Below, one piece after another: positions 742 through 64,000 of a stretch of DNA of 64,000 nt. The stretch comes from Macrostomum lignano. Lineage: Eukaryota. The stretch is from positions 19,062-83,061 of the forward strand of contig NIVC01002920.1 of assembly GCA_002269645.1 (NCBI GenBank), given 5' to 3'. How positions within the stretch are numbered: position 1 is the first letter of the stretch; each line of letters starts with the position of its first letter. Made by a program: the position numbers and the translations under genes. The notes beneath the pieces were generated by a model. The model was given only the letters and a program-made list of their open reading frames with translations. It did no database searches and was not told the DNA's origin.

Positions 742-2668
742 TCAGCCTTCATTCAGAGATGCTTGAACACCAGCGCTACCGGTTGAGAAGTGAGCAACCT
801 CTCGAACTGCACTATTTTGAGCCAAAACGGTGCGCGCAACGCTAGGGATATTGGTGCTCAACTTGATTGATCCGAATGTTTGCTTATCCTGCTCCACTGA
901 AATAAGAAAGATAGTGTTATAAAAGAAACTGCCAGTGGTAGGCCTGTAAAATTTTTGCATTCAATCATTTCATCGTTGTGCTTACGTTTGAAAGTTTTAT
1001 CCTTGATGTCACCCTGAGCAAAGTGCTCGCCGAGATTTATCACAGTATTGCAGAAGGGCACTTTTAATGGTGAACTATCTGAGCAGCACAGCCGAATCGC
1101 TACATGCAGCTCTTTGTCGGGCAATTTCTGAAAGCTGTAGTTAAATGTTGTCATGTAGTTGAACTGGATTTCGATTTCGTCGCCACTGCGCTTGCACTTG
1201 CTAGAATTCGACAATTCTACTTTTGGTGAGTCGTTCCAGTTCCAGTCAGAATTCATTTTAAATCCGACAGAACAGTTAGTTGCATCCGACGGGAGAATTT
1301 CCTTTTGAAACTTTACGCTGACAATATTCAGATTGTAAGTCTTTGTTCGGGCAGCTCGAATGTAGAGCTGCATCATTTCCTCCGTGACGCTAGCAAAGTC
1401 GGATTGCAGCCTTGTCGTTTCATGAGCTGCTGGCACAGCCGCTGCCACCGCTGCCGCATCTTCATATTTGGCAGAGTCAGCAGCCGGCCCCAGCTTCTTT
1501 GAGGCCGCCGCAGCAGCTTGAATATCGTCGAAGTCTAGAGCCGTTTTCAACGCATCGGTATGAGCAGTTATATCGGCCTCTGAGAATTTCGGAGCTAACT
1601 CCGATTCAACAAGTTTACAAAGGTTTTCTAACTGCTGAAGCCGTTCGCCGTAAAACTCGTTCCAATCGGACAGAAGTTTTGCTTTCGTCTTCGCCAACCT
1701 TGCCGCCTTGCTTGCGGCTGCCATCAGCGACTCGAATTCGGCCTAAATGAGAATTTTAGTTCAAGTTTGAATTCTAGCTTCGGGACGCATCATTTTATGT
1801 GTAAAATATTTAAATAGCCGTTTAAAGGCTTTTGTCACTCGTCCGGTAGTAATAATAAAAAAATAATTATTTTTTCTGCAACGATTAAGAAAGCCTATTA
1901 ATAAAAATTAAAAAAAATGTTTTAAATAAGTAGTTATTGCATCTAAATGCCTCTAATTTACAGGCATTTGGATGGCGAAATTTCAACTAAATTTCGTTTT
2001 AACTAACTGCTTTACCATTGTGGTATTACTTGGAGTACTAGAAAAACAGCCTTCAAGTTAATTGGAAACCTGTTTACAGATTCCACGTACTAAAAACGGT
2101 TTGTCGGTATCTAGGTATGCAATTGATTTCGAAGCAAGCTTACTTGAAATAGAAGTCGATCGTCGCTATAATGTAAACCGCAAAGATTCCGATCGCAGTG
2201 CTCGCAGAAGCGCATCGAAGGTTTCCCGCATGGTCGCTGTTGAGCACCATTTTCTAAGGCTTCACATGGAGGCTTCTGGCTGTTTGTTTGTCCTGTCACA
2301 TCCTTTGGCGCAGCCTTGGCCGCCGCAACCAGGATGCGCAGCTGAGAGTTCTCAACAGGTCTTCGCAAGTTCTCCTTGCACAGCGGGCATTTCGCCTCCC
2401 TGGGTCCTGAGCTGCTAACAAAACCTTTGTAGCAGGCCAGGCACAGTGAATGGTGATTCGCGCACACATAGTGGGGGTTATTAAAGAAGTCGAGACACAC
2501 CGGACAGGTAACATCGTTCCTGTCGATTTTGGAATTTTGACTGCCAGCTGAAAAACAGATAATAAGATAAACTAAAGTTAATCCCACAGAGAATTAATAT
2601 TATGCTGCAAGCTAAACTGCATTTAAAATTTTGAAACTCAGTAACTTACCTCCGCCTGAACCGCTCAT
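742..2668 (-). CDS. TRIM-like gene A: RING + B-box + helical region + C-terminal RID/RPGRIP1_C-like C2 domain (about 444 aa)
   Basis: Hand-spliced complement(join(742..896,986..1742,2144..2547,2650..2668)) = 1335 nt, in frame, all GT-AG introns. RING CPVC-x10-CANHHSLCLAC-x14-CPLC. B-box-like C..C..CEHCDRNLCGLH. C-terminus (LNIVSVKF, IQFNYMTTFNYS, VINLGEHFAQGDIKDKTF|..GSIKLSTNIPSV) aligns by eye with the RID units at 54-62 kb. Confidence 0.82.

Positions 2669-3046: not shown

Positions 3047-3047
<1 letters not shown>

Positions 3048-3090
<43 letters not shown>
3048..3090. repeat. (GT)n microsatellite
   Basis: Uninterrupted TG dinucleotide run. Confidence 0.98.
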
Positions 3091-3244: not shown

Positions 3245-3410
3245 ATGGAAATGTTTTGAAGGCCACTTTTCGTCAAAAAATACACTACGGAGATAGGAAG
3301 TTTTCATTTTTCAATCGGACATTAAAATCTCTTAACTTCTCTGAAAATGAAAACTTCCTATCTCCGTAGTGTATTTTTCGGCGAAAAGTGGATTTCAAAA
3401 CTTTTTCCAT
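3245..3410. mobile_element. Short hairpin/MITE; deleted relative of the foldback element at 46.4-47.7 kb
   Basis: Inverted arms of about 60 bp (3254-3312 and 3342-3400, aaaaaatacactacggagataggaagttttcattttt) match the inner arms at about 46810-46865 and 47345-47405. Confidence 0.75.
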
Positions 3411-3642
3411 GAAACGTGAGTGTTGCGTCCTGTGTATAGGTTGCTTTAGTTGTCCTTGTTACGAGGCTCCAGAGCGAGGGTGAGGAAATTATAATTTCCC
3501 CCAACATAAGGAAACTTAAAAATTTTGGAATTTAACATAAATGTACAAAATAAATACTACTTCAACGCGCATGGTAAGTAGTACGGTATACTGTACGTAA
3601 TTTGATAAAATTTTAATAACGCCTCACTATTTATCAGTATCG

Positions 3643-4305
3643 TATCGACAGTATCGACAGTATCGACAGTACCGACAGTATGGACAGTACCGACAGTATC
3701 GACAGTACCGACAGTACCGACAGTACCGACAGTACCGACAGTACCGACAGTATCGACAGTACCGACAGTACCGACAGTACCGACAGTATCGACAGCACCG
3801 ACAGTATCGACAGTACCGACAGTACCGACAGTATCGACAGTATCGACAGTATCGACAGTACCGACAGTATCGACAGTATCGACAGTACCGACAGTATCGA
3901 CAGTACCGACAGTACCGACAGTACCGACAGTATCGACAGTATCGACAGTACCGACAGTACCGACAGTATCGACAGTACCGACAGTACCGACAGTACCGAC
4001 AGTACCGACAGTACCGACAGTATCGACAGCACCGACAGTATCGACAGTACCGACAGTACCGACAGTATCGACAGTATCGACAGTATCGACAGTACCGACA
4101 GTATCGACAGTATCGACAGTACCGACAGTATCGACAGTACCGACAGTACCGACAGTACCGACAGTATCGACAGTATCGACAGTACCGACAGTACCGACAG
4201 TATCGACAGTATCGACAGTACCGACAGTATCGACAGTATCGACAGTACCGACAGTACCGACAGTATCGACAGTATCGACAGTTCTGACAGTACCGACAGT
4301 ATCTA
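3643..4305. repeat. 9-bp satellite (ACAGTACCG / ACAGTATCG)n, array 1
   Basis: About 73 tandem 9-mers in two main variants; source of the spurious RYC, DST and VLS ORFs. Confidence 0.97.
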
Positions 4306-4433
4306 GTAGCTACTTTAATAATACTCATGTTAATACATAAAAATGCCAGGCGACCGCTATTTTAAAAGCTAAAGCTTTTAAATTACATGTCTGAATTACA
4401 TGTTCATTTTACACGTTACACGTTTCTGAATTA

Positions 4434-6707: not shown

Positions 6708-7598
6708 CTACCGGACCAGAATCGCCAGGTAGTCGGCAACCCGACCGTGATCTTTCCACGTAGCGTTGATACCCAAATTGTAGAGGATCGTCGGAAAAGT
6801 AGTGAAATTAAAAAACGTGCACCAATCGCTGGGGGTGTCAATGATCACCAAGGAGCCAGTATCTGTCGGGCATAGCTGGGAAAATATGTTTATGAAAAAA
6901 CGTCGCCTAACTAGGGAGCCAGACACGGAACCTTCGAGGCTGAAAAAGTTGAACTTTTCGTTTTTCAGATTCGTTATGGGGGCCGTCTCGATAAGTCTCT
7001 GACTGGTGAACCAGTTGGTCTGGTTCACTCGCTCAGCAGCGGTTCCAACATCGAACACCCATCGCATAACAACAGATGAGTTTCTGTAGACCTGCACAAT
7101 GAACTGCTTGTAGACTAGGCTAGAAATCAATCGCTGCATGTCGTTGAGCAGACTCGACCTGAATGCGGCGGGCAGGGTTGCAGCCTCCGGGTGAGCCGGC
7201 TGGATCACGTAGTCGAATTCGGCAGCAACAGAATTGAACAGCTCCCAGGCTTTTTGACCGCTGCCGCTCTTGATGCTGAAGACGACGTGCTCAAGAGCGA
7301 TGCGGCTAAGAGGCATTTGCAGAGTGTAGCTGCAGCTGCTTGAGCAGAGCTTGTATCGAGGGCACAGTGACGCAATCAACTGGCACGACTTTCCGGAGTT
7401 CTCGAAAACTATGGCTGAAGGGTCGGTGGACATGGCAGCCGCGATTGAGCATTGCAGTTTGTCTCCGGTGACCAGGGTGGCAGTCACTGAGCAGTTTGGG
7501 TAGAAGGCGTACTGCTTAAACTCGACTCTCTTACTGGGACACGTCGGCAAAGCCGAGGCTGCACTCTGTGCCAACAGAAGCAATACAAGCAGAATCAT
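6708..7598 (-). CDS. Intronless secreted protein, paralogue 1 (signal peptide + degenerate PAN/apple-like Cys module + unnamed C-terminal domain), 296 aa
   Basis: Hydrophobic N-terminus MILLVLLLLAQSAASA. Clear homology to 8136-9047 and 12688-13599 (LLNDMQRLISSL, NWF..RL, FSLEG, RRFFIN, C.TD.G). Confidence 0.85.
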   Translation of the reverse strand: MILLVLLLLAQSAASALPTCPSKRVEFKQYAFYPNCSVTATLVTGDKLQCSIAAAMSTDPSAIVFENSGKSCQLIASLCPRYKLCSSSCSYTLQMPLSRIALEHVVFSIKSGSGQKAWELFNSVAAEFDYVIQPAHPEAATLPAAFRSSLLNDMQRLISSLVYKQFIVQVYRNSSVVMRWVFDVGTAAERVNQTNWFTSQRLIETAPITNLKNEKFNFFSLEGSVSGSLVRRRFFINIFSQLCPTDTGSLVIIDTPSDWCTFFNFTTFPTILYNLGINATWKDHGRVADYLAILVR

Positions 7599-8135
7599 GG
7601 GTGTCTTGAAGAGCTTTGAAATTAACTTGAGAAATTTTTCAATAGCTTGGCTTCGTTGCTGTGAATTGATTTCTGAGAGCGAGATAGCTTAAATATTTCT
7701 ATCCATAGCCAATCAGATGCCAGAGTCGACAGCCCAGACTTCATGCTAATCAATGGCCAATTCGCCATCTAAGTCAAGGACTTTTACTGCATAGGTAATT
7801 TTTCCCCCGCTCAATATTTTATCTTGGATTACTCAAAATCCTGAAAAATCCTTTCGCTCTACTTTAGTAGGCACAAGTGGGTATGTTGAAAGTAATTACG
7901 AAAGAATGCGATATTTTGGACTCAGCTTCTCTACGAAGCATGAGACGACGTCTTCCAATAACATGACTAAGTTAGGCTTAGCCAATACGGAGAAGGTAAA
8001 GGGAGTAAATATACTTGGAGAACATCGTAAAAGGCTTTTTAATCCACATACACTGCCGAACAACCGATCGACCAAGCTTTAGGGATCAAAGATAATTTTC
8101 AAACAAGTTTTTATACAGACCATTAAACTAAAAAT

Positions 8136-9047
8136 ATGAATAACTTTCTCCCACTAATTGTACTGCTCTATAACGTCATCTTCAATTTTCATTTTGCAAC
8201 ATCAACTGCCTGTAGCTCTAAAAGGCTTCAGTACAGAAAGTATGGCTTCCTGCCCAACTGCTCCGAGTCCCTCACGCTGAGCACCGGACGCGCTCACGAT
8301 TGCGTTATGGCTGCAGCTTTGTCACCCGCCCTGTCTGCTGCGATCGTGTCTACTTCCGAGGCCGAATGTCACGTGACCACTGCCCAGTGTCCTCGCTACC
8401 TGTTGTGTTCCACCGACTGTCCCTACACCGTGCTCATGCCTGCCAGTGTACTCAACAGCCTCGAGCACATACGGATGAGCGTGAAGGGCGGCTGTGGTTA
8501 CAAGATATGGGACGTGCTGACTGGGTCGGCATTGCCACCTGACCCTGTTGTCCAGCTGGCCCCTCCCAGCGCAGCTGCCCTGCCGAACGTCTTCCGCTCG
8601 AGCGTGCTGGACGACATGCAGCGCCTGATCTCCGGCCTGACTTTCAAGCAGCTCATCGTGCAGCTGTACAAGAGCTCCGCTGTGGTTGTGAGGCTCGTGT
8701 TTGATGTCGGGACGAACTCCGCCAGTGTCGACCTGACGAACTGGTTCAGAAAGGAGCGTCTCGTACAGAGCTTTCCGGTCACCAACCTCGCCAACATGAG
8801 CACGAACGTCTTCAGCATCAAAGGAGAAAATAGAGGCTCGTTTCAGAGACGTTTTTTTGTCAACTTTAACTATGGTGGCTGCAATAATGACCGCGGGCTC
8901 ATGGCAGTCTTGGATTCCAACGATGACTATTGCGCAGCATACCAATACTCACAGCCGATTCCTCGAATCGTGTTTAGTTCGGATCCCAGTCGCACAATGG
9001 CGACGACAATTCAGGATGCCGAACATTTTGCCATTTTGGCGCGCTAA
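8136..9047 (+). CDS. Intronless secreted protein, paralogue 2, 303 aa
   Basis: Signal-peptide-like start, GC-rich coding bias, motif RRFFVNFNYGGCNNDRGLMAVLD; divergently transcribed from paralogue 1. Confidence 0.88.
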   Translation: MNNFLPLIVLLYNVIFNFHFATSTACSSKRLQYRKYGFLPNCSESLTLSTGRAHDCVMAAALSPALSAAIVSTSEAECHVTTAQCPRYLLCSTDCPYTVLMPASVLNSLEHIRMSVKGGCGYKIWDVLTGSALPPDPVVQLAPPSAAALPNVFRSSVLDDMQRLISGLTFKQLIVQLYKSSAVVVRLVFDVGTNSASVDLTNWFRKERLVQSFPVTNLANMSTNVFSIKGENRGSFQRRFFVNFNYGGCNNDRGLMAVLDSNDDYCAAYQYSQPIPRIVFSSDPSRTMATTIQDAEHFAILAR

Positions 9048-9250: not shown

Positions 9251-9537
9251 TTGATTACACCTGCCCTAATGGGCAGATGCGTAACCGACAGCTCAGCCGC
9301 TGCTATTGCCTGGCGCATTTGAAGGCTGCGTACGGCTGTTCAGTCCAAGGAACGAGGGGTCACCATGCACACACACCCTCAATTACCCCAGCTACATGAA
9401 AGGATGGCACCAAATTTACAGATGGGTGAGCTGAAGCAATTGCTCAACGACACAAACTGTTTCAAGGGGGTCGAGAATCGAACCCCCAACCTTTCAAACC
9501 TGAGTCCGACATTCTTACCACTCAGATACACGAGCCT
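9251..9537 (-). mobile_element. tRNA-derived CORE-like SINE, copy 1 (diverged)
   Basis: Minus-strand head with A-box-like tatctgagtgg and B-box ggttcgattc; body shared with copies at 18.4, 43.1 and 61.7 kb. Confidence 0.7.
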
Positions 9538-18374: not shown

Positions 18375-18645
18375 AATAATAATAATAATAATTGATTACA
18401 CCTGCCAGATGTGCAACCGACAGCTCAGCCGCAGCTATTGCGCGGCGCATCTGAAGGCTGCGTACGGCTGTTCAGTCCAAGGACTGGGGCAGCTAATGCT
18501 GGCACCCATTTTACAGCTGGGTAAACTGAAGCAGTGCAGAGTTAAGTATCTTGCTCAAGGACACAAATTGTTCCAGTGGGATCAGAAATGGAACCCCCGA
18601 CCTTCAGGTCGTGGGTCCGACGCTCTGACCACTAGGCTACTATCC
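18375..18645 (-). mobile_element. tRNA-derived CORE-like SINE, copy 2
   Basis: Minus-strand A box tagcctagtgg, MIR-core-like cccattttacagctgggtaaactgaagca..agagttaagt..cttgctcaagg, (ATT)n tail. Confidence 0.78.
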
Positions 18646-47732: not shown

Positions 47733-47857
47733 ATTCATGCTGTGTACACAAGAACTTAGACAGATAGGCAAATTCAAGAAAAAAGAACAAAGTTGAAAAA
47801 CTCAACACAGCGTCAGAAAATAGTTCTTCGTTCATCAATCTGAATCATTTAATTCGT

Positions 47858-50884: not shown

Positions 50885-52931
50885 ATGAGCAAATCATCTC
50901 AAGGTTTCAATGTTGTTCCTATATTTTATACTTCTGATTTGCAGAGGTTGCTGAGGAGCTGCTATGCCCCGTGTGCTTGGATCCCTACAACGACCCCGTA
51001 TATGTGTGCATCCATCACCATAGCCTGTGCCGCGAATGCTACCAAATGATTGTTTCGACAGCTGGCAGTGACATCCCGCAGTGTCCGCAGTGCCGAGAGA
51101 AATTGACCAGACCCGTTGATAATACTCAACTGCGCCGTCTGGTGGAGGCTCACCAACAGCAATCTCAGCAGGCGGTCCAATGCCAGGACTCTTCCTCTGG
51201 CGGCATCTGTGCTCGGCGTAGTGCTGAGCGATGCGGGCACTGCGAGCAGAGCTTCTGCGCGCAGCACTTCATCGCTCATAAAGAGCAGTTTCAAGTGCGT
51301 ATGAAATTCACTGTTTCTTTATTGTTTTTTAAGGTTCTCGCTCTGAAGATTAATTTTTAGGTTCTTAAATGCGATCACTGATTTCAGACCGATTGCGTTG
51401 AGCTTTTGTCGGCTGCAGATGAAGCAGCTCAGCAGTCAGAGATTCGACAAAGAGTGCTAACCGAATGGGAAGTCTTTATTCAAAGCTGTGTAGCGCATCT
51501 GATTGAGAATTCGAGACTGCAGCGATTAATTCCCGAATCCTGGCTCGACGATGCATCCCGGAGGCACGCCGAAGATTTACGAAGCACCCTCAACGCCGGT
51601 GACCTGCGGGCAGCCAGAGTTGCCTATGATGAACTCAGGATGGCCAAAGCGAGATTCGACCAGCAAGGACCGCCTCGCGAGATCGTTGGAGAGCTCAGCC
51701 GAGATGCGTTGTTCTCTCTGTTTCAAGAGAAGCTTTCAGCCCTGCTGAACGAAGCTGAACAGGTGTACCTTGACGGCATCTACGGCTTGGTCGAACGCGT
51801 TTGCCACATTGGAATTTCCACAGTCAAGCTGAAGATTGGGAAAGAGATACAGAAAATTCCGGAGCTCAAATGCCGGCTTAGTTTCGTCCTGCCCGGTCGA
51901 GGCAGTCACTTCACTCCCTATGTTGACCTCAAAGCCATTCGTGCCGAGCAATTTGAAAGGGACATTCTGATTCGTTTCGATTTCCAGCAGCAGTTCGACT
52001 ACAGCACCATCAGTATGTCGAACGGTCTGGCCATTTTGGCGCAGTTTCTGCAGAGAGGACCGATTGAACTGCCGTTCTGTCTTCAGATGAAGTTTAAGGA
52101 GAGGCTGGCCTCCGGGGTGGCTGAAAATACCTACTGCAGCAGAATGTATCAACTCGCAGCTTTGCTGCCACTGGCGGAGGCGATCAGTCGTGGGGAGAGC
52201 ATCGAAAACGTGGAGTGTCCTTGTGAGCTTCTGAATAATGTACACTTTAAATTACCTTTGTCTACTGAGTCATGACCCTGTTAATTAAACTACAAAAGCT
52301 TTTAGTGTAAAATGCACCAAAAACTCGCGAAACTAACTTTTCTGGTTTCTTAGAAAATATTTGGATTCTGGGCTTGCGCAAAAAATGCAATGCTGTCATG
52401 CTGAAATAGGAAATAGCTTCTCTTCAACACAAATGATAATAATATTAGTTTTTGTAGAAGCAGATTGATAGTAAACTTTTCTGCTGGTTAGATCAGAGGT
52501 ATTTGGAAAGAGTACTTAATTGTTCAAAATCAATAGTTTTTTGCTTTATGAACTAATTAGATAGAAATTGACTTTTACAACTGTAATGCGCATACAAAAT
52601 CAAGGATTTACAGAAGTTGCCCTGTCTGTCTAATGAGTGTCTGACTGGTGGAAATTAACGTTGAAAACGTGAGCTCCTAGCTCGACCGTAAAGACCAGCT
52701 GACGCAGTGCAATTAGCCAGTCGTCGTTGAGCCAGCTCCGGCTTCTTCTGAGATTGAATCTCCAAGAACCAGCCTTAATTGGTCTTTCCCGCAGTGCTGG
52801 ATGAAAATGAGGCACCTCGCGGATGTGTCACGGTGTCCACCAACCTGCCGTGTCTGCTGAACCAAGTCTACCGGGAGCTGCCGGCTGAGGAGCAAAGCGA
52901 AGTTGAATTGAGGCTTCGAGGAGAAGAGTAA
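50885..52931 (+). CDS. TRIM-like gene I: RING + B-box + helical region + C-terminal RID/RPGRIP1_C-like C2 domain (about 446 aa)
   Basis: join(50885..50903,50945..51294,51388..52222,52795..52931) = 1341 nt in frame. The last exon, missing from the ORF track, reads LDENEAPRGCVTVSTNLPCLLNQVYREL and matches the RID small exon GSIKISTDLPSLLLEIGREL. The first exon is less certain (41-bp intron). Confidence 0.82.
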
Positions 52932-54128: not shown

Positions 54129-57100
54129 TCACTGCATTCCATACTCACTTTTAACGTGATGAAGCAGCCGTGGCAGGCTGGTTTCAATCGCGATGCTGCC
54201 AATCTTCTTCTCGTTTTGAATGACTGAAATGAAAACGTTGATTGAATCTGGGGTGATTAACAGTAAAATACATTTTTTCTTTGTTGGATTGTGTTTTAAA
54301 TGGTGTTTTAGAAATCGAACAAACTCGGAGAAGAAGTATAGCTCGTAGATCTATTTTTACCGTTACAGAAAATATAAAAACTGACACTCTGCGGAACCTT
54401 TGTGAGAATTCTATTCATCGGTTGATTTTTTATAATTCGGCTAAAGTAACTTGGTCACTCATTTAGTTGTCAATATATGATCCACTACACAAAACTTTAA
54501 TGCCTTATAAAAGACCCACGAAACATTTCAAACGTCTGTAGACCCCACGTCGATGTACGTCGCAGGCAATTGGGTATTTTGACGTTAAGCCGAAGGACAA
54601 TGACATCATGCGTAGGTCAGAATTCGATGTAATGTATTAAATGTATCAAATCTGCCCCCCAACATAGATGGACGTCGAAAACGTCTGCTGACCTAAATGA
54701 CTTCAAATTGCAGACGGGAGAGAGAAATCTCTAAATCTCACGTGGAAACTCGTTCCAGATGCAGCGGTCCTGTTCGATACTGGGTTGCAGGCCGACACTG
54801 GCCTCGCACAAGTCGCCGGCTGCCTCAGAAGCCAGCGTGAATCGAAGCTCGACTGGATCAGCCAGTAGCAAGCTGGTTAGCTGCTTCCTCATTCCTTCTT
54901 CTGAGTAATCGAAGCGCCATATATAGTCGAAGTTTAGGCGATAATCTCCAGGCTGAGACCACCCGGGTCTGGGGATGAGCACGCTGGGCGTGTGCGTATC
55001 CTCAGAGTCGGAATAGCCAGGTAGATTGAAGTAAACATAGCAGTTGTTAAGTTTGGGATTTTTCAAGGCCTCACTGTTCTCCATTAGATGCACAGTTGAT
55101 ATGGCGATGTCGCAGTGCCTCGAAACACTTTTCACTGTGAATGGTTTTTGTGTTTATGCTTTTTCTAGAATTTGAAGCGTTTACAAGCGTTAAAAGTCGA
55201 AAATACTTACTCCTATAATTCAGATGACTTCTGATGCTGATAGGTACAAATCTAAGTAGAGATTTTGGTAGCTCACGGCCGATCTCCAGTAGCAAGCTGG
55301 GCAAATCCGTGCTGATTTTGATGCTGCCCACCTGCTCGGTCCTCGCCATTACTAAAAGTTTTTGATAAAATTCATTACAAAATCCGAAATTCATATTTAC
55401 CGTATACGCTTAACCAAGAAAAAAGCAAGTTTACACGCACCAGGAAATCTCTCGTCTCTAACATCTACATGTACTTCACGTCTTAAGTAATCATCGAGTT
55501 TTATGATAGTCCTTCCCAATTCAGTCTTAACGAAAGAGCTTGCCAAGTTTGGTGATTTGCAAAATACTTTGAACGCGATCTGCAGGTTTCCCTCGAGAAT
55601 CGACTTGGCCAGCATCAGGCGGTTTTGGTAGTTGCCTGTCATGCTGTAGTCGTAAGTCTTTTCAAAATTGAAAGCAAGAAGGAACCCGTTTTTCGGAGAT
55701 TGCACCGAATTCAGGACTGGTCTCAAAAGAGACGTCATTGTTTCTTGAAGCTTGAAGCCGACTAGGTCAAATGCTACGTAGCACTTTCCCTTGCCAAGCT
55801 GTGAATTTGTCAAGACTTCAGATGAGCCGTTCAGTTGCACGTCAGCTATTCGCACAGTGCAGTTCTCAACGAAGGCTTCATCGATTTGCGAATAGGCTGA
55901 TTATTACCTGTAATCGAAAGGTACATGTCTGTCGTATCTATGGGAATGCATAGTTGTAAATATGAAGCCTCATTTATTTAATAGTTAAAAATACAAGGAT
56001 AGTTCGACATTGTCTCACCCTCGGCTTCATTTTCCTCAGCAGTAGGTTTTTGGACGTCCTCAAACGAGTCTAACCGTTTCCTGATCGAAATTAGCAGACT
56101 CGGCAGGCTCATGCTGATTTTGATGCTGCCAACTTTATTACCGTTTGACAGTACTAAAGTTACAAAGCGATACATTTTAATGCGACAACAATTCGGACAC
56201 TATCAGCATGTGATGCTAAAAGCCATCTAGCTTTTTACCAGACAGTATACATTTTTTTAAACTCTTGAAACTTGACTGAAACCTGCATTGCTTGCATACG
56301 AGTACTAAGAACTCATATTAATATACGACCAATGCCATCATATCACACTGGGACTACTGAAATAAAGGGTAAACCACCGTTGGACTAACAGGGAAAGCCA
56401 CCCACTGTCTATCTACCGATCTAAAAAAACTCACGTGGAAAGCTTTGTTTTCGAATATCCTCGCCTCGAGCAACAAACTCGTCCATTTTGACAGTCGCCT
56501 TGCCAAGATCCATGTAGAATTCACTCTCTGAGTCGGACGGCTCGCAAGCTACCACGAACGGAATCTCGATGCACTTTCGTCTTAAAAGCAGCATAGTTAA
56601 TATTTTTCTCTTGCTTGCGCTGCTGTAGTCGTAGACTCCTTGGAAATTGTAGCTGAGGCAGAACTCCTCAGGTCGCGACCGGCCCGGCCTGGGCGTCGGC
56701 ACAGATCCGGGCGTTTCCGTCTCCTCGCTTCGGAAACCGGGTAGCGAGAAGAGCACGGAGCACTTGGTGTTGTCGAGTTCTGGCTTCCTCAAAACATCGC
56801 TTGTTTCACTGAGCTCCACATTGAATATCTGGACTTTACAGCTTTCCATAGTGAATGAAACTAAACCTAGTAGCTTTTTTAAGTCGTTCTAATTCTGTCT
56901 GGCATCATTTAAATAGCAAGTTCGCAAACTGCAACTTCAGCTGAACTTTGGAATCTAAGAGGGAAGGTGAAGTTCTTAGGTAAAAATTGTCCACCTTAAT
57001 GAACTCCCACTTTCTCTGAGTAATTTGGGCTCTGGAATAATATTAGCAAAAAATGAAGTCAGAGATCTTCTACGTGCTGCAAAAGCCAATCTTCCTTTGT

Positions 57101-59444
57101 GCGAAAGAGAGTTAGAAATTGTCAGAAAAGTGGATGCGCTGCACACATCTTTGAGTACGTCATTGTGCATAATAAAATGGCAGCACTAAAATTAGCAGCT
57201 TACCCAAATGAAGTTCGCTTGATATTTTCTATTTATCTACCAAAATATAAAAATAAAAACGCTGAAACAATATCTAATTCATAATATAATCAGAATATAA
57301 TTCTGAATTAGAAATAAAAACAAAAATTGCAAACTTATTCACTAAGAATCTACGATACACACACCGTAAAACATAACAAACGAGATTCTCTATAGATGTA
57401 CATGTTAGTACAGAAAATTTAATTTAGAAATAACCTGATGCATCAGTTACACAACCAATGAGCATATGCTTACATGTAAAGTTGAGCAAAATGTTAGTAG
57501 CATGTACAGCTGATTCTAACGAGCGCACTGGTTTGATTATAGCTCTCATAACTTTTTTAGCAGAATTTCAAACCACTTGGGCACTTTGAAATTGATAAGC
57601 TTTCTAGCTCTTTAAAAAAGTTATTGACTTTTTTTTACCCTCTGGTATTTCATCGCAGATTTCCCGCAGCAGACTGGGCAAGTTGGTGCTAATCGTGATG
57701 CTGCCAACAACTTCATCTCCGTTCAGTACTGAAATAATAAAAAACGGCGTGTCTGGTGAACGACGCGTCTACTCGACATGTCCACTCAAAGCCCATTCTA
57801 CTGAATTTTAAGCACGCACAAACATGAAAACAATCATAAACTCATCAACTCAATCATGAAATTATCAACTCAATCATGATATCATCAACTCAATCATGAT
57901 ATCATCAACTCAATTATGAATCATCAACTCAATTATGAGATCATCAACTCAATTATGAATCATCAATGTAATCATGAGATCATCAACGCAATCAATAAAT
58001 CATCAACTCAATCCATAAAATCAACAACTCATTTTTGAAATATTCAACTCAATCATGAGATCATCAACGCAATCGTGAAATCATCAGCTCAATCAATGAA
58101 TCATCGACTCGATCATGAACTCCTGAACTCATGAATTTGATTATCATCAAAAGCGTGGATCATTCAAAATTAAGACCACAAAAGAACATCAAAAGTTAGC
58201 TAGGATAAAAAATCAAAGCGAATAAACTAATTAATTAACATGTCTTGAAAAAACCTACACGGAAAGCTCTCGTCTTGAATGTCCTTGCCATCAGACACAC
58301 GATCTTCGAGCTTGACGACCGCAGTGCCAAAATCCAAGAAGAACTCGCTGTCCTGATCCTCCGCCTCGCACACCAAGGTGAACGGAAGCTTAACTGGACT
58401 CGCCATTAACAGAGTGGCAAGCTGGATCCGCTTATTGTAATTTGTATCGTAGCTGTAGTCAAATCTCTTCTGGAAGTTAAACCTAAGATGGAAATCTTTT
58501 GCCTTGGTCCAGCCTGGTCTTGGCGTTGGTAGCGAGAGAGAAGTCTCCGTTTCGTCCATATCAAAACCAGGTAGATCAAAGGACACAAAGCTGTTGGTGT
58601 TGTCGAGCTCGGGATTCTGTAGAGCTCGGCAAGATTGCTCTAGCTGGACACTCGATATACAAACTGTACACATCTCGCGCGAGTCTGCTTTAGAAGTCGA
58701 CTGAGTCTTCCGACTGAGTGCTGAAGTTTGTTTCAGGTTTCAAACTCTTATTGAGAGTGTCTTTACGAGAAAATGACGAATAAATACAGAGTAAAATGGC
58801 AACAATAAAGCTTAAATTCTCACAGTCTTTAATATGATCATCGGCAGCTGGATTCGTTTCTATGCAAACGGCGAGCAGTAAGCTGGGCATACTTGTGCTC
58901 AGCTTTATCGTGCCAACTTGCTCTTTGTAGTAGGAAAGCACTAAAATATAAAACATCCGATTGATAGTAGTTAAGGAACTGATTTCAATTGATTACCTAC
59001 CGGTATTTTAAAAATATAACATTCTCAACCCGCACCAGGAAAGCTTTCCTTTTGGACGTCGTCCTTTCGAGCAATTCTATTATCGAGTCTGACAACGGCT
59101 CGGCCCAGATTAACTTCACTTTGCGATTCGTCCGGTAGGCAAATCAGGGTAAAATTGACATCAGCATGATACCGGCTGAGCATGTCATCCAGAGCCTGTC
59201 GCTTGCCTCTGCTGGAATAGTCGTATGAACTTTCGTAATCGAATTTCAGGACCAGATCCTGGCGTGTGGACGCTCCTGGTTTTCGGGTCGGCAGGATGGC
59301 GGGGGTCCTGGTGGCCTCCAGCTTATAGCTTGGCAGATCGAAAAGCACGTAGAACTTCGAACTTCTCAGATTCAATCCTGCCAAATCAGGGCAAGTCTGG
59401 TCGAGCCGGACGCTGAATATTTTCACCACGCAGCTTGATTCCAT
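54129..59444 (-). CDS. Protein of five tandem RID/RPGRIP1_C-like C2 domains (about 885 aa), stand-alone or a 3' extension of RPGRIP1L
   Basis: complement(join(54129..54223,54742..55134,55277..55351,55441..55896,56019..56153,56435..56860,57639..57728,58259..58720,58824..58940,59036..59444)) = 2658 nt, no stops, nine phase-1 GT-AG introns. Each domain is a large exon ending F-P-x plus a small (V/I)GSI.IS..LPSLL exon. A further 3' exon is possible (donor at 54148). Confidence 0.78.
57836..58130. repeat. Degenerate minisatellite of about 20 bp (ATCATCAACTCAATCATGAT)
   Basis: About 14 imperfect units inside an intron of the five-RID gene. Confidence 0.88.
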
Positions 59445-61485
59445 GGCTCCGCTGTAAAATCCGCATAAAATCCATGTAAAATTCAGATATTATTAGTTTG
59501 ATAAGAGAGTTCTCGCTGTTTCTAGAAAATTAAAGAACCTTTTTTTCCAGAATGTTCTGAATTACTGATTGACTGAATTACTGAATAAATTTGTTTGAAT
59601 TACTGAATAACTTTGTTGTTATACTCGTGAAATCTCAGTTTGTTGAAATGAAGAAAAAACAGCGAGAACTTTCTTATCAACCGAATATAATTATTATCAG
59701 TTGCTCTTTCTGCAAGCTTACCCAAATTGATGGTTCTTTGCTATCAAGACTTGCAGTCAATATAATCGTACTTGCATATATGATTACGAACTTATACACT
59801 GCTACAGAGGTATTCTGAAACTTTTTCTGCATTGTGTTGGCTTTTTAGCGAGAGACAGTTTGCATTTTGAAAGACTCACAATTCGTTCGGATGGATGGAC
59901 GTATGTACGAGTGAGCGCTCAGAAAGACTTACTCATGCATGATATGTGAGAGAACCATTTAATTTCGACAAATCTTACACTATTCATCAGTGGTCTATTG
60001 TACGAGTACATTAAACTGCCTGCCAACTCTCTCAACTTAGCTCTTATTGTGGAGTATGTGCGTACTCAGCATCCACATCTAGTCTGTCTGAGGTTTGCGT
60101 CCACTTTTTACAAAGCATTCTTTTATTAAAATGCGTCTAAACAGTCTCTAAGCGTAGCTTTCTGTATGCTAGAAAGACTACTGCACTCGTACATCCGTTT
60201 TAGTAAGTTACATGTATTTTTAATTTTTCTCAAAAATAGTGCATCAAACCTCTAAAGGACAGTTAATTGCTCGCTTTCTTATTTGAAAGTACAACAGGCG
60301 AAATATTATAAATTTTGTCTTATAAGCTTTCCATCTCCCTAATGAGAAATCCTCGAACGAACTTTTAAACTGCATCCTTTAGATATCCATAAAAACTTTC
60401 TCAAATTTGATTCCCACGTACACCGCCTTTCTGACAAAATACTTAGATTGTACTATGGTAAATAATAAATAAAAGTCCATTCGTGCCAATGCTGCAATTC
60501 CACTTGCATTGTTCAAAAACAGGTCTTTTGAAAGAGATTTTCTTACCATGTTATACTCAGAATCTAAAAGTATTTTTGCATATACTGCATTTAGGACTGT
60601 ATGGTATTGAATGATGGGTCTTTGATCGAACCAAAAAGTCTGAATTTAGAGCAAACCTTATTTCTTAGTTTTTGAATTTGCTCGTATATTTTCTATCCGA
60701 TATTTCGTGTCAGCTGATGGAGAATCTTTCATAACTCTAAATAACTTAACCAAATAAGCATTATTAGAAGAGGATATAGTTAAAATTAGATTTAAAATTT
60801 TCTCAGATCGACAACCGGCACATCTTAGGCGCATAACCCTTAGAAAAGCGTTTATTTCGCTTTTGAGTTACAAAGCAATTTTTAACTTAACTTTATCCCT
60901 GCTCGTCGCAATCGCGCTAAAGTAGTTACGCTCGTAGAAGTAAAAATATCAAATATTCAAGTCGGTAAAGTACGAGACGCAGCATCTGTGATAGAAGATA
61001 GACAGGTTTTTTTCAACATTTTTGTAGAAAATCACAGCGAGAAAGCGAAAGATCAGGCGTCGAAATAATAAATAAAATAGTTCTTAAGAGTACGAGCGTA
61101 TTCCTTTACATAAACGTGGTGCGAGGTTTCTGAGAGTGCATGTTTACTCTTACAGAAATACCGAAAAGAGACAGTTCGTCTAAATTCTACCACAAAGTAC
61201 CTTAACCGAAACGGAACGAACCAGAAACTATTAGCAAGACACTCCAGGTGCCGATATTACCAAGCTACCATAACTAGCCATAAATCTAAAAAACTAGAAA
61301 ATACGTAACACCATTTAGCTTCAAAACATGACACGTGCCAGACGTTATTATAACGTACAACAAAATCGCAGTGTACTATGATGAGAATCGCATAAAGGTA
61401 ATAAAATATCTGCAGGTTTTTTACAAAATCCATTATACTAAAATCAAGTCTAAAATGTCTTTAACAGCCAGAAGACAGAGCAGGA

Positions 61486-64000
61486 TTAGTTAACGAATCT
61501 GACGGCAGACTTTTTCGCGTCCGGGAGTTCGTTGTAGACCTCCAGTAGCAGGCTCGGCAGGTTCATGCTGATTTTGATGCTGCCCACTTGTTCATCGTTC
61601 AGCATTACTAAAATTGTTAGAAGACACATGGCATGATTAATGTGAGGTTTGGATTAGTCAAACTTTTTTATTTACCAAATATTGAAAAAAATATAATTAC
61701 ATATTACTACTAATGATAATAATTGATTAAACCTGCCCAAAGGGTATTACGTGGCGCATCTGAAGGCTGCGTACGGCTGTTCAGTCCAAGGACTGGGGGT
61801 CGCCAGATAGCCTCAATTACCCCAGCTAATGCTGGCACCCATTTTACAGCTGGGTGAACTGAAGCAATGCAGAGTTAAGTGTCTTGCTCAACGACACAAA
61901 TTGTTCTGAGAGGGTCCAAAATCAAACAACCGACCTTTCAGTCGCTTGTCCAACGCTCTGTAACCACTAAGGCTACAACAAGTATTTGTGAAAGTGTATT
62001 TCAAATAATCCTACTCGAGTTTTCACCCGAGTCAACTGGAACTCACGAGGAAAGATCTCTTCTCGAATGTCCTCGCCTTGAGCGATTCGATCGTCCAAAT
62101 TGACCATCGTTTTGCCCAGATCCACGAAAAATTCGCTCTCTGGATCAGACGGCTCGCACACCACAGTAAACGGGATCTCAATACTCTTCTGTCCCAATAG
62201 CAGCATCGCCAGTACTTTGCGCTTCTCGTAGCTGCCGGCGAAACTGTAGTCGTAGACTCTCTGAAAGTTGTAACTGAGGCAGAACTCATTGGTCGGGACT
62301 GGCCGGGCCTGGGCGTCCAGAGAGACACTGGCGTCTCCGTCTCCTCCTGCGAGAAGCCAGGCAAGAGGAAGAACACGTAGCACTTGGTGTCATCGAGGTC
62401 GGGATTTCTTAAGCCTGGCAGGTCTCGCTAAATTGCACGTTGAATATCTGGACTGTGCAGGCTTCCATTGAAGCACGACCAGTAGCTGTCAGCATCAGCT
62501 GCTGGCGGAGCTCGTCCCCGTGGCTACTCTCCGTCACCACGCCATCGATTCCTCCGCCTCCGGTGCCGGACGCTCTGTGTCCTCGTAGTCGTCCTCATAC
62601 TCAACCTCCTCCACTTCGTCTTCCGGTTCCGCCTCGGCAACGTCGTAATCGTCGTCTCGCAGACTGACGGACTGCAGATGCGAAGCGACGCCGCTTCTAC
62701 CAACGCTTGGACCTGAAGAATTCGTGGAGTTTAGAATTCGCTTGGAGCTTGGAACTATTGGTTTAGTCTTTATCTTCTGCAACCTGCTTATTCGTTTTTA
62801 GACAAGCCCTGGGTCAGGGTCATTGACAATGCCGAAACTCACCTAACGATGTATTTCTCACGTCCTGCGTATCCGTGATGCTAGTTACGCTGTCGGTGAC
62901 GGATGCTAAAGTGATGAAACCAGTTAGGAAAATTTTAGCAGCCTTGTTTTAGCCAGAAATAGTACTAACAGTAGGTTGATTAAACATGCATAGGCCTACC
63001 ATCCATGAGGGTGCTGACCCGAGTCTGGCTCGCCTGCGTATCGCCAGCGCCACCGCTGCGCCGATGCCAAAGCCGACGCTCTGCGCGGCAGCGGCTAAAG
63101 CAGCGGCCGACGGGCGTGCCGTTTCGGCGGTTGCGGCGTCTGAGACACCTGCGGCTGAATTTGGAGTTGGGATTCAAAATATACAGCTAGCTAAAAATAA
63201 ACTTCAGTAAATTTTATTATCTTATCAACACTACCAACCTGATTGTCCCCAGTCAGAGATCCCGACCGACTGCCAGTTCGTGCACTCGGTCGTGGCGACG
63301 ACGATCCCGACGCTGAATTCGGTGCTACAGCCGACGCTGTTGGCGATGGACCATGGCTGCTTCCGCTGGCACTTCCTGGGTGCCTCGGCGCGGGGTTCTC
63401 GGCTGCTGAACTGGCTGTGGCTGCGGCTGCTGGGGCTGAGTCGCTGCTGCGTGCTTCTCGCTGATCCGGTGTCGGATCCCAAGGCCACCGCCGCGCTGCG
63501 ATCAAGAGTAGAGTCATACCCAGGTTCCCGACGGCTTCAACTGCGGCTTGTCTCTCAGCAGTTCAGCTTCGCCAGTCATCAGTGGCAGAGGCTCGGCAGG
63601 TCCGTCCCAATGACCAGCTGGATTGTACGCAAACTGCCAGCTGAGCTCAAGCTCCAGAGTGCCGTTCGGCTGCTGATCAGCTCCGAGTAGTTGGTAGATG
63701 CCCTGCACAGCCCGGTTCTGGCTTAAGGACACTAGATCGATCTACATGGGGATACGAGTAGATAGGGGATTAGTAATGGGTAAATCGGTAAGAATAAGAA
63801 TCTTTTGGGTCTTGAATATCGAGAAATATGAAAAGTTCAGCCATGGCTGTTAAAACGTGTCTAAATCCTTATTGAAAACAATGAATGACATCCAAGTCAC
63901 CTTAGCAACGCCTAGGTAGGCGCCTTTCAAGAGGATCGTCTTCGTCCAGCACCCAGACGACGAGCTTCTGCGTCTTCAAATAGCGATCCAACTCTGGGGT
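61486..64000 (-). CDS. RPGRIP1L: 3' part of RPGRIP1L/MKS5-like gene (end of second C2 domain, low-complexity/acidic linker, RID); partial, several frameshifts
   Basis: ELDRYLKTQKLVVWVLDEDD..YLGVAK|IDLVSLSQNRAVQGIYQL....PNGTLELELSWQFAY matches the RPGRIP1L C2 end as recalled (DLDRYLKSESL..VFDD, ISGIFEL, GTIHVILKWKFAY). The RID carries ETETPVSL and FTVVCEP. Exons: 63901..>64000, 63520..63741, unresolved 62990-63500, about 62047..62780, 61486..61607. Confidence 0.8.
61705..61978 (-). mobile_element. tRNA-derived CORE-like SINE, copy 4 (last intron of the RPGRIP1L-like gene)
   Basis: Same body as 43090-43405; head tgtagccttagtggttacagagcg on the minus strand. Confidence 0.78.

What the first reader, a model, noticed from the sequence alone, without database searches (positions are those of the whole stretch)
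742..2668. TRIM-like E3 ligase ending in a ciliary RPGRIP1L-type RID C2 domain (gene A)
Seen: after RING, B-box and helical segments the protein ends in a domain that aligns motif by motif with the RID units at 54-62 kb (LNIVSVKF~VCISSVQL, TNCSVGF~TNSFVSF, IQFNYMTTFNYS~LRFNFQKRFDYS, GDIKDKTF~GKDIQDESF, GSIKLSTNIPS~GSITISTNLPS). It has a phase-1 intron (897-985) at the same position as every RID unit. Established: TRIM proteins use a variable C-terminal module (PRY/SPRY, NHL, MATH and others) for substrate binding; the RID is a C2-fold domain of RPGRIP1/RPGRIP1L that binds the RCC1-like domain of RPGR. I know of no RING-B-box-RID architecture. Inference: a lineage-specific E3 family that co-opted the RID for substrate recognition, e.g. 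ciliary protein turnover or immunity.
Basis: partly seen in the sequence, partly recalled or inferred. Interest (0 to 1): 0.9.

Follow-up and report, generated by a model that had tools for sequence, protein, structure and literature searches.

The report
Flatworm RING ligase with borrowed ciliary domain
A gene of the flatworm Macrostomum lignano joins a TRIM-like RING ubiquitin-ligase front end to a diverged copy of the RPGR-binding C2 domain of the neighbouring ciliary gene RPGRIP1L. The domain combination is real and apparently lineage-specific, but its function is untested.

Summary
On the minus strand, 742-2668 holds a four-exon, GT..AG-spliced gene of 444 aa. It is identical to M. lignano PAA54387.1, which is annotated only as a hypothetical RING-type protein.

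- **N-terminal half.** There is a complete C3HC4 RING whose best matches are TRIM RINGs. It is followed by an atypical B-box-like Cys/His cluster with no PF00643 hit, and by about 130 helical residues.
- **C-terminal domain.** Residues ~277-418 fail Pfam RPGR1_C on their own. Even so, they are homologous to genuine RIDs encoded in the same window:
  - 41 bits against a RID-unit HMM, versus at most 9 bits in 2000 shuffles.
  - hhalign probability 98.9 %, E 2.6e-17.
  - An unbiased exhaustive search of 1.84 billion proteins found only M. lignano RID proteins, including the true RPGRIP1L-type protein.
  - All eight RID-type units share a phase-1 intron at the same column.
  - The AF2 model is a C2 sandwich, and 4QAM_B gives the best query-normalised TM-score.
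- **Distribution.** Only gene A and one sister gene at 50.9-52.9 kb, out of ten clustered RING paralogs, carry this domain.

E3 activity, the binding partner and any ciliary role are inferred, not shown. This is a new variant of a known kind, of moderate interest.

The parts
742..2668 (-). Gene A, whole transcription unit from ATG to stop (444 aa; = PAA54387.1, BOX15_Mlig013468g1)
   Evidence: Spliced model with canonical GT..AG introns translates without stops. It is 100 % identical to the annotated protein.
2650..2668 (-). Exon 1 (MSGSGG + 1 nt), followed by the phase-1 intron 2548-2649
   Evidence: The sister gene at 50885-50903 has the same 19-nt first exon and the same phase.
2144..2547 (-). 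Exon 2: RING plus B-box-like zinc module
2378..2506 (-). C3HC4 RING finger, aa 21-63 (C21 C24 C35 H38 C42 C45 C60 C63; CPVC...CPLCK)
   Evidence: The isolated exon scores 21.6 bits on Pfam zf-C3HC4, against a gathering score of 21, and matches several other RING families. PDB best hits are the TRIM31/30/5/21 RINGs.
2159..2266 (-). B-box-like Cys/His cluster, aa 101-136 (C101-x11-C113-x7-C121-x-H-C124-x4-C129-x2-H132-x3-D136)
   Evidence: Cys/His columns are invariant across 9 paralogs. Profile alignments to TRIM21 (5olm) and TRIM72 run on into their B-box. There is no PF00643 hit; ANCHR-like_BBOX reaches E 0.03 in 3 paralogs only.
1350..1742 (-). Helical, probably coiled-coil region, aa 142-272 (first part of exon 3)
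   Evidence: Long helices 132-272 in a low-confidence single-sequence AF2 model. phmmer aligns aa 7-194 to TRIM3 RING-B-box-CC at E 0.0014. The region is homologous to the second exon of the other RING paralogs.
823..1337 (-). RID-derived C2 domain, aa 277-418, interrupted by the phase-1 intron 897-985
   Evidence: homology to genuine RIDs. (C2 fold; 4QAM_B has the best TMq, 0.58). (shared intron).
897..985 (-). Phase-1 intron inside the RID-derived domain (GTAAGC...TTTCAG), splitting Leu394
   Evidence: same column and phase in all 8 RID-type units of the window.
742..896 (-). Exon 4: last RID strand/helix (GSIKLSTNIPSVARTV), a 26-aa tail and the stop codon
   Evidence: this exon alone scores 23.9 bits with the A4 HMM.
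50885..52931 (+). Sister RING-B-box-like-CC-RID gene ('B51', 446 aa; ~ A0A1I8GNY8 / PAA67346.1), with the same exon plan and phases
   Evidence: RID-unit HMM 60.5 bits. Sister of gene A in both the RING tree and the RID tree.
54132..59489 (-). Tandem array of five additional genuine RID units (u59, u58, u56, u55b, u55a), the likely source pool of the domain
   Evidence: Pfam RPGR1_C above gathering score for 3 of 5 first exons tested (1 below, 1 no hit) and for 6 of the 8 complete units of A4, i.e. all but gene A and B51. P0006 is an RPGR1_C domain-containing protein. Unit anatomy.
61489..64000 (-). 3' end of the bona fide RPGRIP1L-type gene, including its own C-terminal RID; the gene continues beyond the window
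   Evidence: P0007 (PAA67348.1, 1290 aa) has C2-C2_1 at E 2.6e-43, C2, and RPGR1_C at E 1.9e-14. Its C-terminal sequence matches window ORFs at 61.5-63.7 kb at ≥90 % identity; P0007 itself is recorded from another contig.

Best explanation
Gene A encodes a Macrostomum-specific, TRIM-like RING protein. Its layout is RING, then an atypical B-box-like zinc module, then a long helical/coiled-coil region.

Its C-terminal ~145 residues are a diverged copy of the RPGR-interacting domain (RID, a Ca-independent type II C2 sandwich) of the RPGRIP1L-type gene in the same cluster.

**Origin (inferred from anatomy).** RPGRIP1L's terminal RID exons were tandemly amplified. Five extra units lie just downstream of that gene. 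One copy was captured by a member of an adjacent tandem family of RING genes. The fused gene then duplicated, giving B51 (next to the array) and gene A (48 kb away). The RID's internal phase-1 intron was kept throughout.

**Mechanism (inferred by analogy with TRIM/RBCC ligases).** The helical region dimerises the protein. The RING recruits an E2~ubiquitin; its CPVC...CPLCK motifs have the usual E2-contact and linchpin positions. The RID-derived C2 domain serves as the partner- or substrate-binding module. The leading candidate partner is an RCC1-like beta-propeller such as the flatworm RPGR, or another transition-zone protein, but divergence makes a new specificity quite possible.

**Shown:** gene structure, RING, homology of the domain to genuine RIDs, C2 fold, shared intron, restricted distribution.

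**Inferred:** ligase activity, dimerisation, partner identity, any ciliary role.
For: - **Gene model.** The model equals the annotated protein. A second, independently annotated 444-aa copy, P0008, has the same architecture.
- **RING.**
- **Homology to RIDs.**
  - 41.4 bits against at most 9.0 bits in 2000 shuffles.
  - An exhaustive hmmsearch used only the gene A + B51 domains. It found the 2-RID protein P0006 (E 1.2e-12) and the RPGRIP1L-type P0007, matched at its C-terminal RID, residues 1134-1275 (E 3.2e-6). Nothing outside M. lignano was found.
  - hhalign Prob 98.9 %, E 2.6e-17.
  - The combined profile hits the human RPGRIP1 RID 4QAM_B end to end at E 7e-10.
- **Shared intron.** A phase-1 intron at the same column in 8 of 8 units.
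- **Fold.** The AF2 model (pLDDT 72.7, pTM 0.67) is a C2 sandwich. 4QAM_B has the best TMq (0.58), the longest alignment (174 columns) and E 1.5e-5.
- **Same plan in the sister gene.** B51 has the same exon plan and groups with gene A in both trees.
- **Constraint.** B51 against its homeologs gives pN/pS 0.29, and 0.22 in the RID part, binomial p 0.023.
Against: - Gene A's domain fails Pfam RPGR1_C outright. The RING-family profile does not detect the human RID directly. The domain is therefore strongly diverged. It also lacks the helical insert (KRxxLAxLL) present in the other RIDs, so RPGR binding may be lost.
- By Foldseek E-value a generic plant C2 (1wfj) ranks first. The model was built from an MSA made largely of RIDs.
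- There is no canonical B-box, and the coiled coil rests on low-confidence evidence.
- Thirteen of the 14 amino-acid differences between the two gene A copies fall in the CC and RID parts. That could mean relaxed constraint. No DNA for the second copy was obtainable.
- No expression, localisation or activity data were examined.
Confidence: 0.6

Rival explanations
1. Neutral by-product. The fusion is real DNA but is a functionless or decaying product of the rampant segmental duplication of the M. lignano genome. The RID-derived part is drifting and the protein has no maintained role.
For: - The domain has diverged below Pfam's threshold and has lost an internal helix.
- Differences between the gene A copies are concentrated in the CC and RID parts.
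- The locus is a hotbed of tandem duplication, with ten RING paralogs, eight RID units and a degenerate retroelement.
Against: - The ORF is intact, with canonical splice sites, in at least two gene A copies and three B51 copies.
- All RING ligands and the conserved RID core motifs are retained.
- pN/pS is 0.29 in the sister gene, though on only 14 substitutions.
- Gene A and B51 are only 23-25 % identical, yet both keep the full architecture. That implies long retention.
Confidence: 0.15
2. The C2 domain is not a substrate receptor. The RID-derived C2 acts as a localisation module (membrane or ciliary base, as the C2 of NEDD4/ITCH ligases does). Alternatively, the protein is a competitive decoy that sequesters the RPGRIP1L partner, with the RING playing a secondary role.
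For: - Foldseek hits include the ITCH and NEDD4L C2 domains and many lipid-binding C2s at similar scores.
- C2 domains are the common currency of transition-zone scaffolds (PMC4519163).
Against: - The RID class is described as a Ca- and lipid-independent protein-protein module (PMC4519163, PMC4466403).
- The sequence affinity is specifically to RIDs, not to lipid-binding C2s.
Confidence: 0.15
3. Annotation artefact. The RING/B-box exons and the CC-C2 exons belong to different transcripts, and the 444-aa protein is a gene-prediction chimera.
For: No RNA evidence was examined here. Other database models of this gene (P0002-P0004) are visibly mis-spliced.
Against: - All ten paralogs have the same RING exon followed by a CC exon, joined by a phase-0 intron.
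- CC and RID lie in one uninterrupted exon (986-1742), so the CC-RID join needs no splicing.
- Two independent annotations, on two assemblies, give the same 444-aa product.
- B51 has the identical plan.
Confidence: 0.05
4. The C-terminal domain is an unrelated C2 class (for example B9-C2 or a generic C2), or a chance resemblance to the RID.
For: The only direct Pfam hit is a faint B9-C2 match (E 0.14-0.19). 1wfj ranks first by Foldseek E-value.
Against: See: strong, specific and colinear similarity to genuine RIDs over the whole domain, plus an identical intron position and phase.
Confidence: 0.03

Closest known systems
RPGR-interacting domain (RID; Pfam PF18111 RPGR1_C) of RPGRIP1/RPGRIP1L, structure 4QAM chain B
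   Same: - C2 beta-sandwich of about 150 aa at the C-terminus of the protein.
- Colinear core motifs: I-x-V-x-L; C-x-V-x-F; L-x-F-(N/D)-(F/Y)-x3-(F/Y)-(D/N)-Y-S; G-x-D-I; G-S-I-K-(I/L)-S.
- Same phase-1 intron as the flatworm RPGRIP1L RID.
- Homology established through the M. lignano RIDs.
   Different: - Not attached to the coiled-coil/C2-C2_1/C2 body of RPGRIP1L; instead it is fused to a RING-B-box-like-CC module.
- Scores below Pfam's threshold.
- Lacks the helical insert after the DYS motif.
- RPGR binding is unknown.
TRIM/RBCC E3 ubiquitin ligases (e.g. TRIM21, TRIM5, TRIM3; TRIM37 with its unique MATH domain)
   Same: - The order N-terminal C3HC4 RING, second zinc module, long helical region, variable C-terminal binding domain.
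- The RING is most similar to TRIM RINGs.
- Tandem lineage-specific expansion, as in vertebrate group-2 TRIMs (PMC2533329).
   Different: - The second zinc module does not match PF00643 and has an atypical first ligand pair.
- The C-terminal module is a RID-type C2. This is not among the listed TRIM C-terminal domains (PRY/SPRY, NHL, FN3/COS, PHD-BROMO, filamin, MATH, ARF, EXOIII; PMC2533329).
- No orthology to any named TRIM was shown.
M. lignano sister gene B51 (PAA67346.1 / A0A1I8GNY8; window 50885-52931)
   Same: Identical architecture, exon plan and intron phases. It is the only other known RING-RID protein.
   Different: - Only about 23-25 % identical to gene A.
- Keeps the helical insert and has an extra ~25-aa insertion before the last strands.
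- Lies tail to tail with the RID array, whereas gene A lies 48 kb away.
NEDD4-family HECT ligases (ITCH, NEDD4L) with an N-terminal C2 domain
   Same: A ubiquitin ligase combined with a C2 domain. Their C2 domains appear among the Foldseek hits.
   Different: They use a HECT catalytic domain rather than a RING. Their C2 is N-terminal and lipid/Ca-binding, and it is not of the RID class. This is analogy only.

Membership tests
TRIM / RBCC | C3HC4 RING finger with all eight zinc ligands at the N-terminus | tested here: met
   Ligands are C21, C24, C35, H38, C42, C45, C60 and C63. The exon scores 21.6 bits on zf-C3HC4, against a gathering score of 21, and all 9 paralogs tested hit RING families. 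The profile hits the TRIM21 RING at E 8.4e-10.
TRIM / RBCC | B-box zinc finger (type 1 or 2 consensus; Pfam PF00643) after the RING | tested here: inconclusive
   None of the 9 paralogs tested hits PF00643; ANCHR-like_BBOX reaches E 0.03 in 3 of them. The conserved pattern C..C-x7-C-x2-C-x4-C-x2-H-x3-(H/D) fits the second half of the B-box1 consensus but lacks the initial CxxC. HMMER alignments to TRIM21 (5olm) and TRIM72 extend into their B-box.
TRIM / RBCC | Coiled-coil region following the B-box that mediates dimerisation | tested here: inconclusive
   The single-sequence AF2 model shows helices 132-272, but at pLDDT below 55. phmmer aligns aa 7-194 to TRIM3 RBCC at E 0.0014. No coiled-coil predictor or oligomer test was run.
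TRIM / RBCC | E2-dependent ubiquitin ligase activity | not testable with these tools
   Only sequence features are available: CPVC and CPLCK, with Lys64 at the linchpin position. This is inference from established RING biochemistry.
RPGR1_C / RID (PF18111) | Scores at or above Pfam's gathering threshold (22.9 bits) | tested here: not met
   Gene A gives no RPGR1_C hit even at E<=10, whether full length, C-terminal half or trimmed domain. The same holds for B51. The six genuine units do pass.
RPGR1_C / RID (PF18111) | Significant whole-domain homology to bona fide RIDs | tested here: met
   41.4 bits against at most 9.0 in 2000 shuffles. Exhaustive search: P0006 at E 1.2e-12 and the P0007 RID at E 3.2e-6. 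hhalign Prob 98.9 %, E 2.6e-17 over 153 columns.
RPGR1_C / RID (PF18111) | C2 beta-sandwich fold closest to the RPGRIP1 RID (4QAM_B) | tested here: inconclusive
   All 32 hits at E<=0.001 are C2 domains. 4QAM_B has the best TMq (0.58), the longest alignment (174 columns) and E 1.5e-5, but 1wfj has the lower E-value (5.4e-6). The model is of medium confidence and was built on a RID-rich MSA.
RPGR1_C / RID (PF18111) | Gene structure shared with the RID-coding exons of RPGRIP1L in the same genome | tested here: met
   A phase-1 GT..AG intron at the identical alignment column in gene A, B51, the RPGRIP1L RID and all five array units.
RPGR1_C / RID (PF18111) | Binds the RCC1-like domain of RPGR | not testable with these tools
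   This needs binding assays or complex modelling with the M. lignano RPGR ortholog. Interface residues could not be checked because the primary structure paper is not held.
RPGRIP1 / RPGRIP1L orthologs | N-terminal coiled coil + C2-C2_1 (PF11618) + central C2 + C-terminal RID | tested here: not met
   Gene A has none of PF11618 or PF00168. The true ortholog-type protein is P0007, encoded at the other end of the window. Gene A is not an RPGRIP1L; only its last domain derives from one.

The most novel reading that the evidence does not exclude
The RID is being used in Macrostomum as a portable, rapidly diversifying recognition module. It has been locally amplified to eight copies in 64 kb and captured by RING ligases. 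On this reading, gene A and B51 are the first members of a new ligase class that targets RCC1-like propellers or transition-zone components for ubiquitination. They would form a lineage-specific regulator of ciliary gate composition in a heavily multiciliated animal, or alternatively an arms-race or reproductive recognition system analogous to TRIM-SPRY expansions.
Probability: 0.2. Interest if true: 0.65.

Novelty: new variant of a known kind. Interest (0 to 1): 0.42.

Why it matters
If functional, this gene would show three things.
- The RID, so far known only as the terminal module of the ciliopathy proteins RPGRIP1 and RPGRIP1L, can be reused as an autonomous binding domain.
- RBCC-type ligases can acquire C2-class receptors.
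- The whole evolutionary path can be caught in one 64-kb locus: donor gene, tandem amplification of the donor exons, capture by a neighbouring RING gene, then duplication and divergence.

It would also give cilia biologists a natural reagent: an E3 physically coupled to an RPGR-binding-type domain, in an organism where RNAi and in situ hybridisation are routine.

Databases currently label the protein only as 'RING-type domain-containing' or hypothetical, so the RID relationship is not annotated. It remains a two-gene, single-species observation without functional data, so the significance is moderate.

Tried and rejected
- **Direct Pfam scans.** Gene A was scanned as full length, C-terminal half and trimmed domain. 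None gave an RPGR1_C hit, only a faint B9-C2 match. I rejected the B9-C2 reading because the RID evidence is far stronger.
- **Pairwise phmmer, gene A against the RID first exons.** Too weak to decide.
- **First MAFFT alignment of gene A and B51.** It misaligned the terminal motif. I fixed this by trimming the inputs.
- **First submission of the exhaustive search.** A homolog search that returned P0005 solved this.
- **Word-indexed homolog search with the RID alignment A4.** It returned nothing. As a result, neither a deep MSA nor a database-wide Pfam architecture listing (RING + RPGR1_C) could be obtained.
- **Single-sequence AF2 of the full protein.** pLDDT was 39.9, too low to use for fold search.
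- **RING-family-only profile against PDB, and against the human RID by hhalign.** Neither gave a significant RID hit.
- **DNA for a second gene A copy (P0002, P0008), wanted for Ka/Ks.** Not on record. I used the sister gene's homeologs instead.
- **Literature searches.** Searches covered the locus tag, Macrostomum + RPGRIP1L, TRIM architectures and RPGRIP1L + E3 ligases. None found a precedent. The primary 4QAM paper is not held, so conservation of the interface residues was not assessed.
- **A hidden RID exon in the other eight RING paralogs.** None was found.
Full report
**1. What is in the sequence**

The window is eukaryotic. It is the last 64 kb (record positions 19062-83061) of contig NIVC01002920.1 of the Macrostomum lignano assembly GCA_002269645.1.

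On the minus strand, the finding's coordinates delimit a four-exon gene: exons 2668-2650, 2547-2144, 1742-986 and 896-742. All three introns are GT..AG, with phases 1, 0 and 1.

The 444-aa product is identical to NCBI PAA54387.1 (BOX15_Mlig013468g1, 'hypothetical protein') and UniProt A0A267E0H6 ('RING-type domain-containing protein'). A second 444-aa copy from another annotation (P0008, A0A1I8HNB8) differs at 14 residues.

**2. The N-terminal half**

- **RING.** Residues 21-63 form a complete C3HC4 RING: C21, C24, C35, H38, C42, C45, C60, C63.
  - The full-length protein falls just below the Pfam RING thresholds.
  - The isolated exon reaches the zf-C3HC4 gathering score. All nine paralogous RING exons tested from the window hit RING families.
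  - A profile of those nine hits the TRIM21 RING at E 8.4e-10, followed by TRIM34, TRIM32, TRIM5 and BRCA1.
- **Second zinc module.** Residues 101-136 hold a cluster whose Cys/His columns are invariant across the paralogs.
  - HMMER alignments to TRIM21 (5olm) and TRIM72 continue into their B-boxes.
  - No paralog hits PF00643, and the first CxxC/CxxH pair of the B-box consensus is missing.
  - I therefore call it B-box-like, not a B-box.
- **Helical region.** Residues ~142-272 are predicted helical in a low-confidence model. They are homologous to the second coding exon of the other RING paralogs.
- **Conclusion.** 'TRIM-like' is a fair description of the layout. Membership of the TRIM family proper is not established.

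**3. The C-terminal domain**

There is no RPGR1_C hit at any threshold, only a faint B9-C2 match at E 0.14-0.19.

The comparison units at 54-62 kb are genuine RIDs. Their first exons score 38.5, 39.4 and 24.5 bits on PF18111, against a gathering score of 22.9. Six of the six complete units pass.

The unit at 62.6-61.5 kb is the C-terminal RID of the real RPGRIP1L-type protein (P0007, 1290 aa). That protein carries C2-C2_1 at E 2.6e-43, C2, and RPGR1_C at E 1.9e-14. Its 3' end lies in this window.

Against these flatworm RIDs, gene A's domain is clearly homologous:
- An HMM of the five complete array units gives 41.4 bits over the whole domain, against a maximum of 9.0 in 2000 composition-matched shuffles. 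The sister gene gives 60.5 bits.
- A profile built only from gene A and its sister was run exhaustively against 1.84 billion representative proteins. Besides the two RING-RID genes' own clusters (P0005, P0002, P0004), it found just two further proteins, both from M. lignano. These are a two-RID protein (E 1.2e-12) and P0007, matched exactly at its C-terminal RID, residues 1134-1275 (E 3.2e-6).
- Inside the window the same profile hits seven separate RID exons and nothing else.
- hhalign of that profile against genuine RIDs (six flatworm, one human) gives Prob 98.9 %, E 2.6e-17 over 153 columns.
- All eight RID-type units share a phase-1 intron at the same alignment column. It splits a Leu/Val codon right after F-P/K.

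The link to vertebrate RIDs is transitive only. The eight-sequence profile hits 4QAM_B end to end at E 7.3e-10. The RING-family-only profile does not reach it.

An AF2 model of residues 263-428, built with a nine-row MSA, has pLDDT 72.7 and pTM 0.67 and is an all-beta sandwich with a terminal helix. In Foldseek all 32 hits at E<=0.001 are C2 domains.
- 4QAM_B has the best query-normalised TM-score (0.58), the longest alignment (174 columns) and E 1.5e-5.
- A plant C2 (1wfj) has the nominally lower E-value, 5.4e-6.

The fold evidence is therefore consistent with a RID, but by itself it does not separate the RID from other C2 classes.

**4. Context and origin**

The window holds ten related RING genes. 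Eight of them (RING exons at about 16.7, 24.3, 29.9, 33.1, 38.2, 45.0 and 49.1 kb, minus strand, among others) have the RING/B-box-like exon and the helical exon but no RID-type exon.

Only two carry the domain: gene A and the gene at 50885-52931 (+), called 'B51' here. B51 is 446 aa and matches A0A1I8GNY8 / PAA67346.1.

B51 has the same exon plan and phases as gene A. It lies tail to tail with the RID array. That neighbourhood (B51, an RPGR1_C gene, then the RPGRIP1L-type gene) is repeated on two other contigs.

Gene A and B51 are sisters in distance trees of both the RING exon (44 % bootstrap) and the RID domain (71 %). Together with the shared intron-less CC-RID junction, this favours a single capture event followed by duplication. 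The support is weak, and long-branch effects cannot be excluded.

B51 against its homeologous copies gives pN/pS 0.29, and 0.22 in the RID part. This rests on only 14 substitutions; the one-sided binomial p is 0.023. That is modest evidence for purifying selection.

For gene A itself no second DNA copy could be fetched. Its two protein copies differ at 1 RING/B-box-region (aa 1-141), 7 helical-region and 6 RID residues.

**5. How it most likely works**

By analogy with RBCC ligases (established knowledge; PMC2533329 for the family's modular logic), I infer the following:
- The helical region dimerises the protein.
- The RING engages an E2~Ub. Its CPVC and CPLCK motifs are of the usual active type (read from the sequence).
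- The C-terminal module selects the partner.

The RID class is described as a Ca- and lipid-independent protein-protein C2 module that binds the RCC1-like domain of RPGR (PMC4519163, PMC4466403). The first candidate partner is therefore the flatworm RPGR or another propeller or transition-zone protein.

Gene A's domain is strongly diverged, however, and lacks the helical insert after the DYS motif. A changed specificity is at least as likely. None of this was tested.

**6. Comparison with what is known, and novelty**

The thing works like a TRIM with a new C-terminal receptor. It is not an RPGRIP1L ortholog, because it has no C2-C2_1 or central C2 domain. It also does not itself satisfy Pfam's RPGR1_C threshold.

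The catalogue of TRIM C-terminal domains that I consulted contains no C2 or RID type. Literature searches found no RING-RID protein and no mention of this locus.

The exhaustive search shows that the diverged subtype is confined to M. lignano in current databases. It cannot exclude RING fusions with canonical RIDs elsewhere, because my attempt to list database architectures failed.

I classify the finding as a new variant of a known kind.

**7. Verdict**

The architecture and the origin of the domain hold. The 'B-box' is atypical, the direct Pfam test is negative, and the functional inference is untested.
- Interest is moderate (0.42). It is a clean, locus-resolved example of domain capture involving a ciliopathy-gene module. 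It is limited to two genes in one highly duplicated genome and has no functional evidence.

Noticed in passing
window 54132-59489 (-): Five extra genuine RID (RPGR1_C) units lie in tandem directly downstream of the RPGRIP1L-type gene's own RID. Each is built as a ~138-aa exon, a phase-1 intron and a ~30-aa exon. In other copies of the locus they are annotated as separate RPGR1_C-only proteins of 331-370 aa. Multi-RID or RID-only proteins are themselves unusual.
   Followed up: partly
window 61489-64000 (-): This is the 3' end of the bona fide RPGRIP1L-type gene (P0007 / PAA67348.1; C2-C2_1 + C2 + RPGR1_C). The RID first exon appears split over three reading frames (62594-62412, 62427-62035, 62389-61976). 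These may be short introns or frameshifts relative to the other units.
   Followed up: partly
window ~15700-49150 (-): A tandem family of further RING + B-box-like + helical genes lacks a RID. Their RING exons end near 16774, 24342, 29991, 33198, 38331, 45063 and 49143. Two subgroups are visible in the tree: 24k/29k/33k/38k, and 45k/49k. Their C-terminal tails have no Pfam match.
   Followed up: partly
window 20262-21916 (-): A GC-rich (0.555) fragment of an LTR-retrotransposon pol gene carries RT_RNaseH, Integrase_H2C2 and rve domains. It is spread over different reading frames, so it is degenerate.
   Followed up: partly
window 6711-7688 (-), 8127-9044 (+), 12676-13596 (+): Three paralogous single-exon ORFs of 306-326 aa have hydrophobic N-termini and conserved Cys motifs (CPRYLLCSTDCPYT...). 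The two tested had no Pfam match. They may be a lineage-specific secreted-protein family.
   Followed up: partly
window 3047-3090; 3627-4328; 57850-58160: Three simple repeats were seen: a (GT)n microsatellite; a long ~9-bp-period minisatellite that is open in several frames (CRY.../DST... translations); and a ~20-bp minisatellite (GATGATTTCATGATTGAGTT-like) inside the intron of RID unit u58.
   Followed up: no
window 3256-3410: A near-perfect inverted repeat gives mirror-image ORFs on both strands (…KIHYGDRKFSF…). It may be a hairpin or a MITE-like element.
   Followed up: no
window 9323-9571 (+), 18346-18654 (+), 43097-43339 (+); also 46228-46596 (-) vs 47417-47764 (+): Dispersed repeated segments share translated strings: CNRQLSRSYCAAHLKAAYGCSVQGLG…, and LKQKIVYGSCVWQSLAEKLAYTSVLNNSPLEQ…. 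They are probably interspersed repeat families of the M. lignano genome.
   Followed up: no
L002 / L003 (NIVC01001491.1 180143-202685; NIVC01000210.1 59465-82007): Two other contigs carry identical copies of the B51-type gene, next to an RPGR1_C gene and the RPGRIP1L-type gene. They have 0 differences between them and about 1 % divergence from the window copy. This is consistent with the duplicated (homeologous or allelic) structure of this genome.
   Followed up: partly
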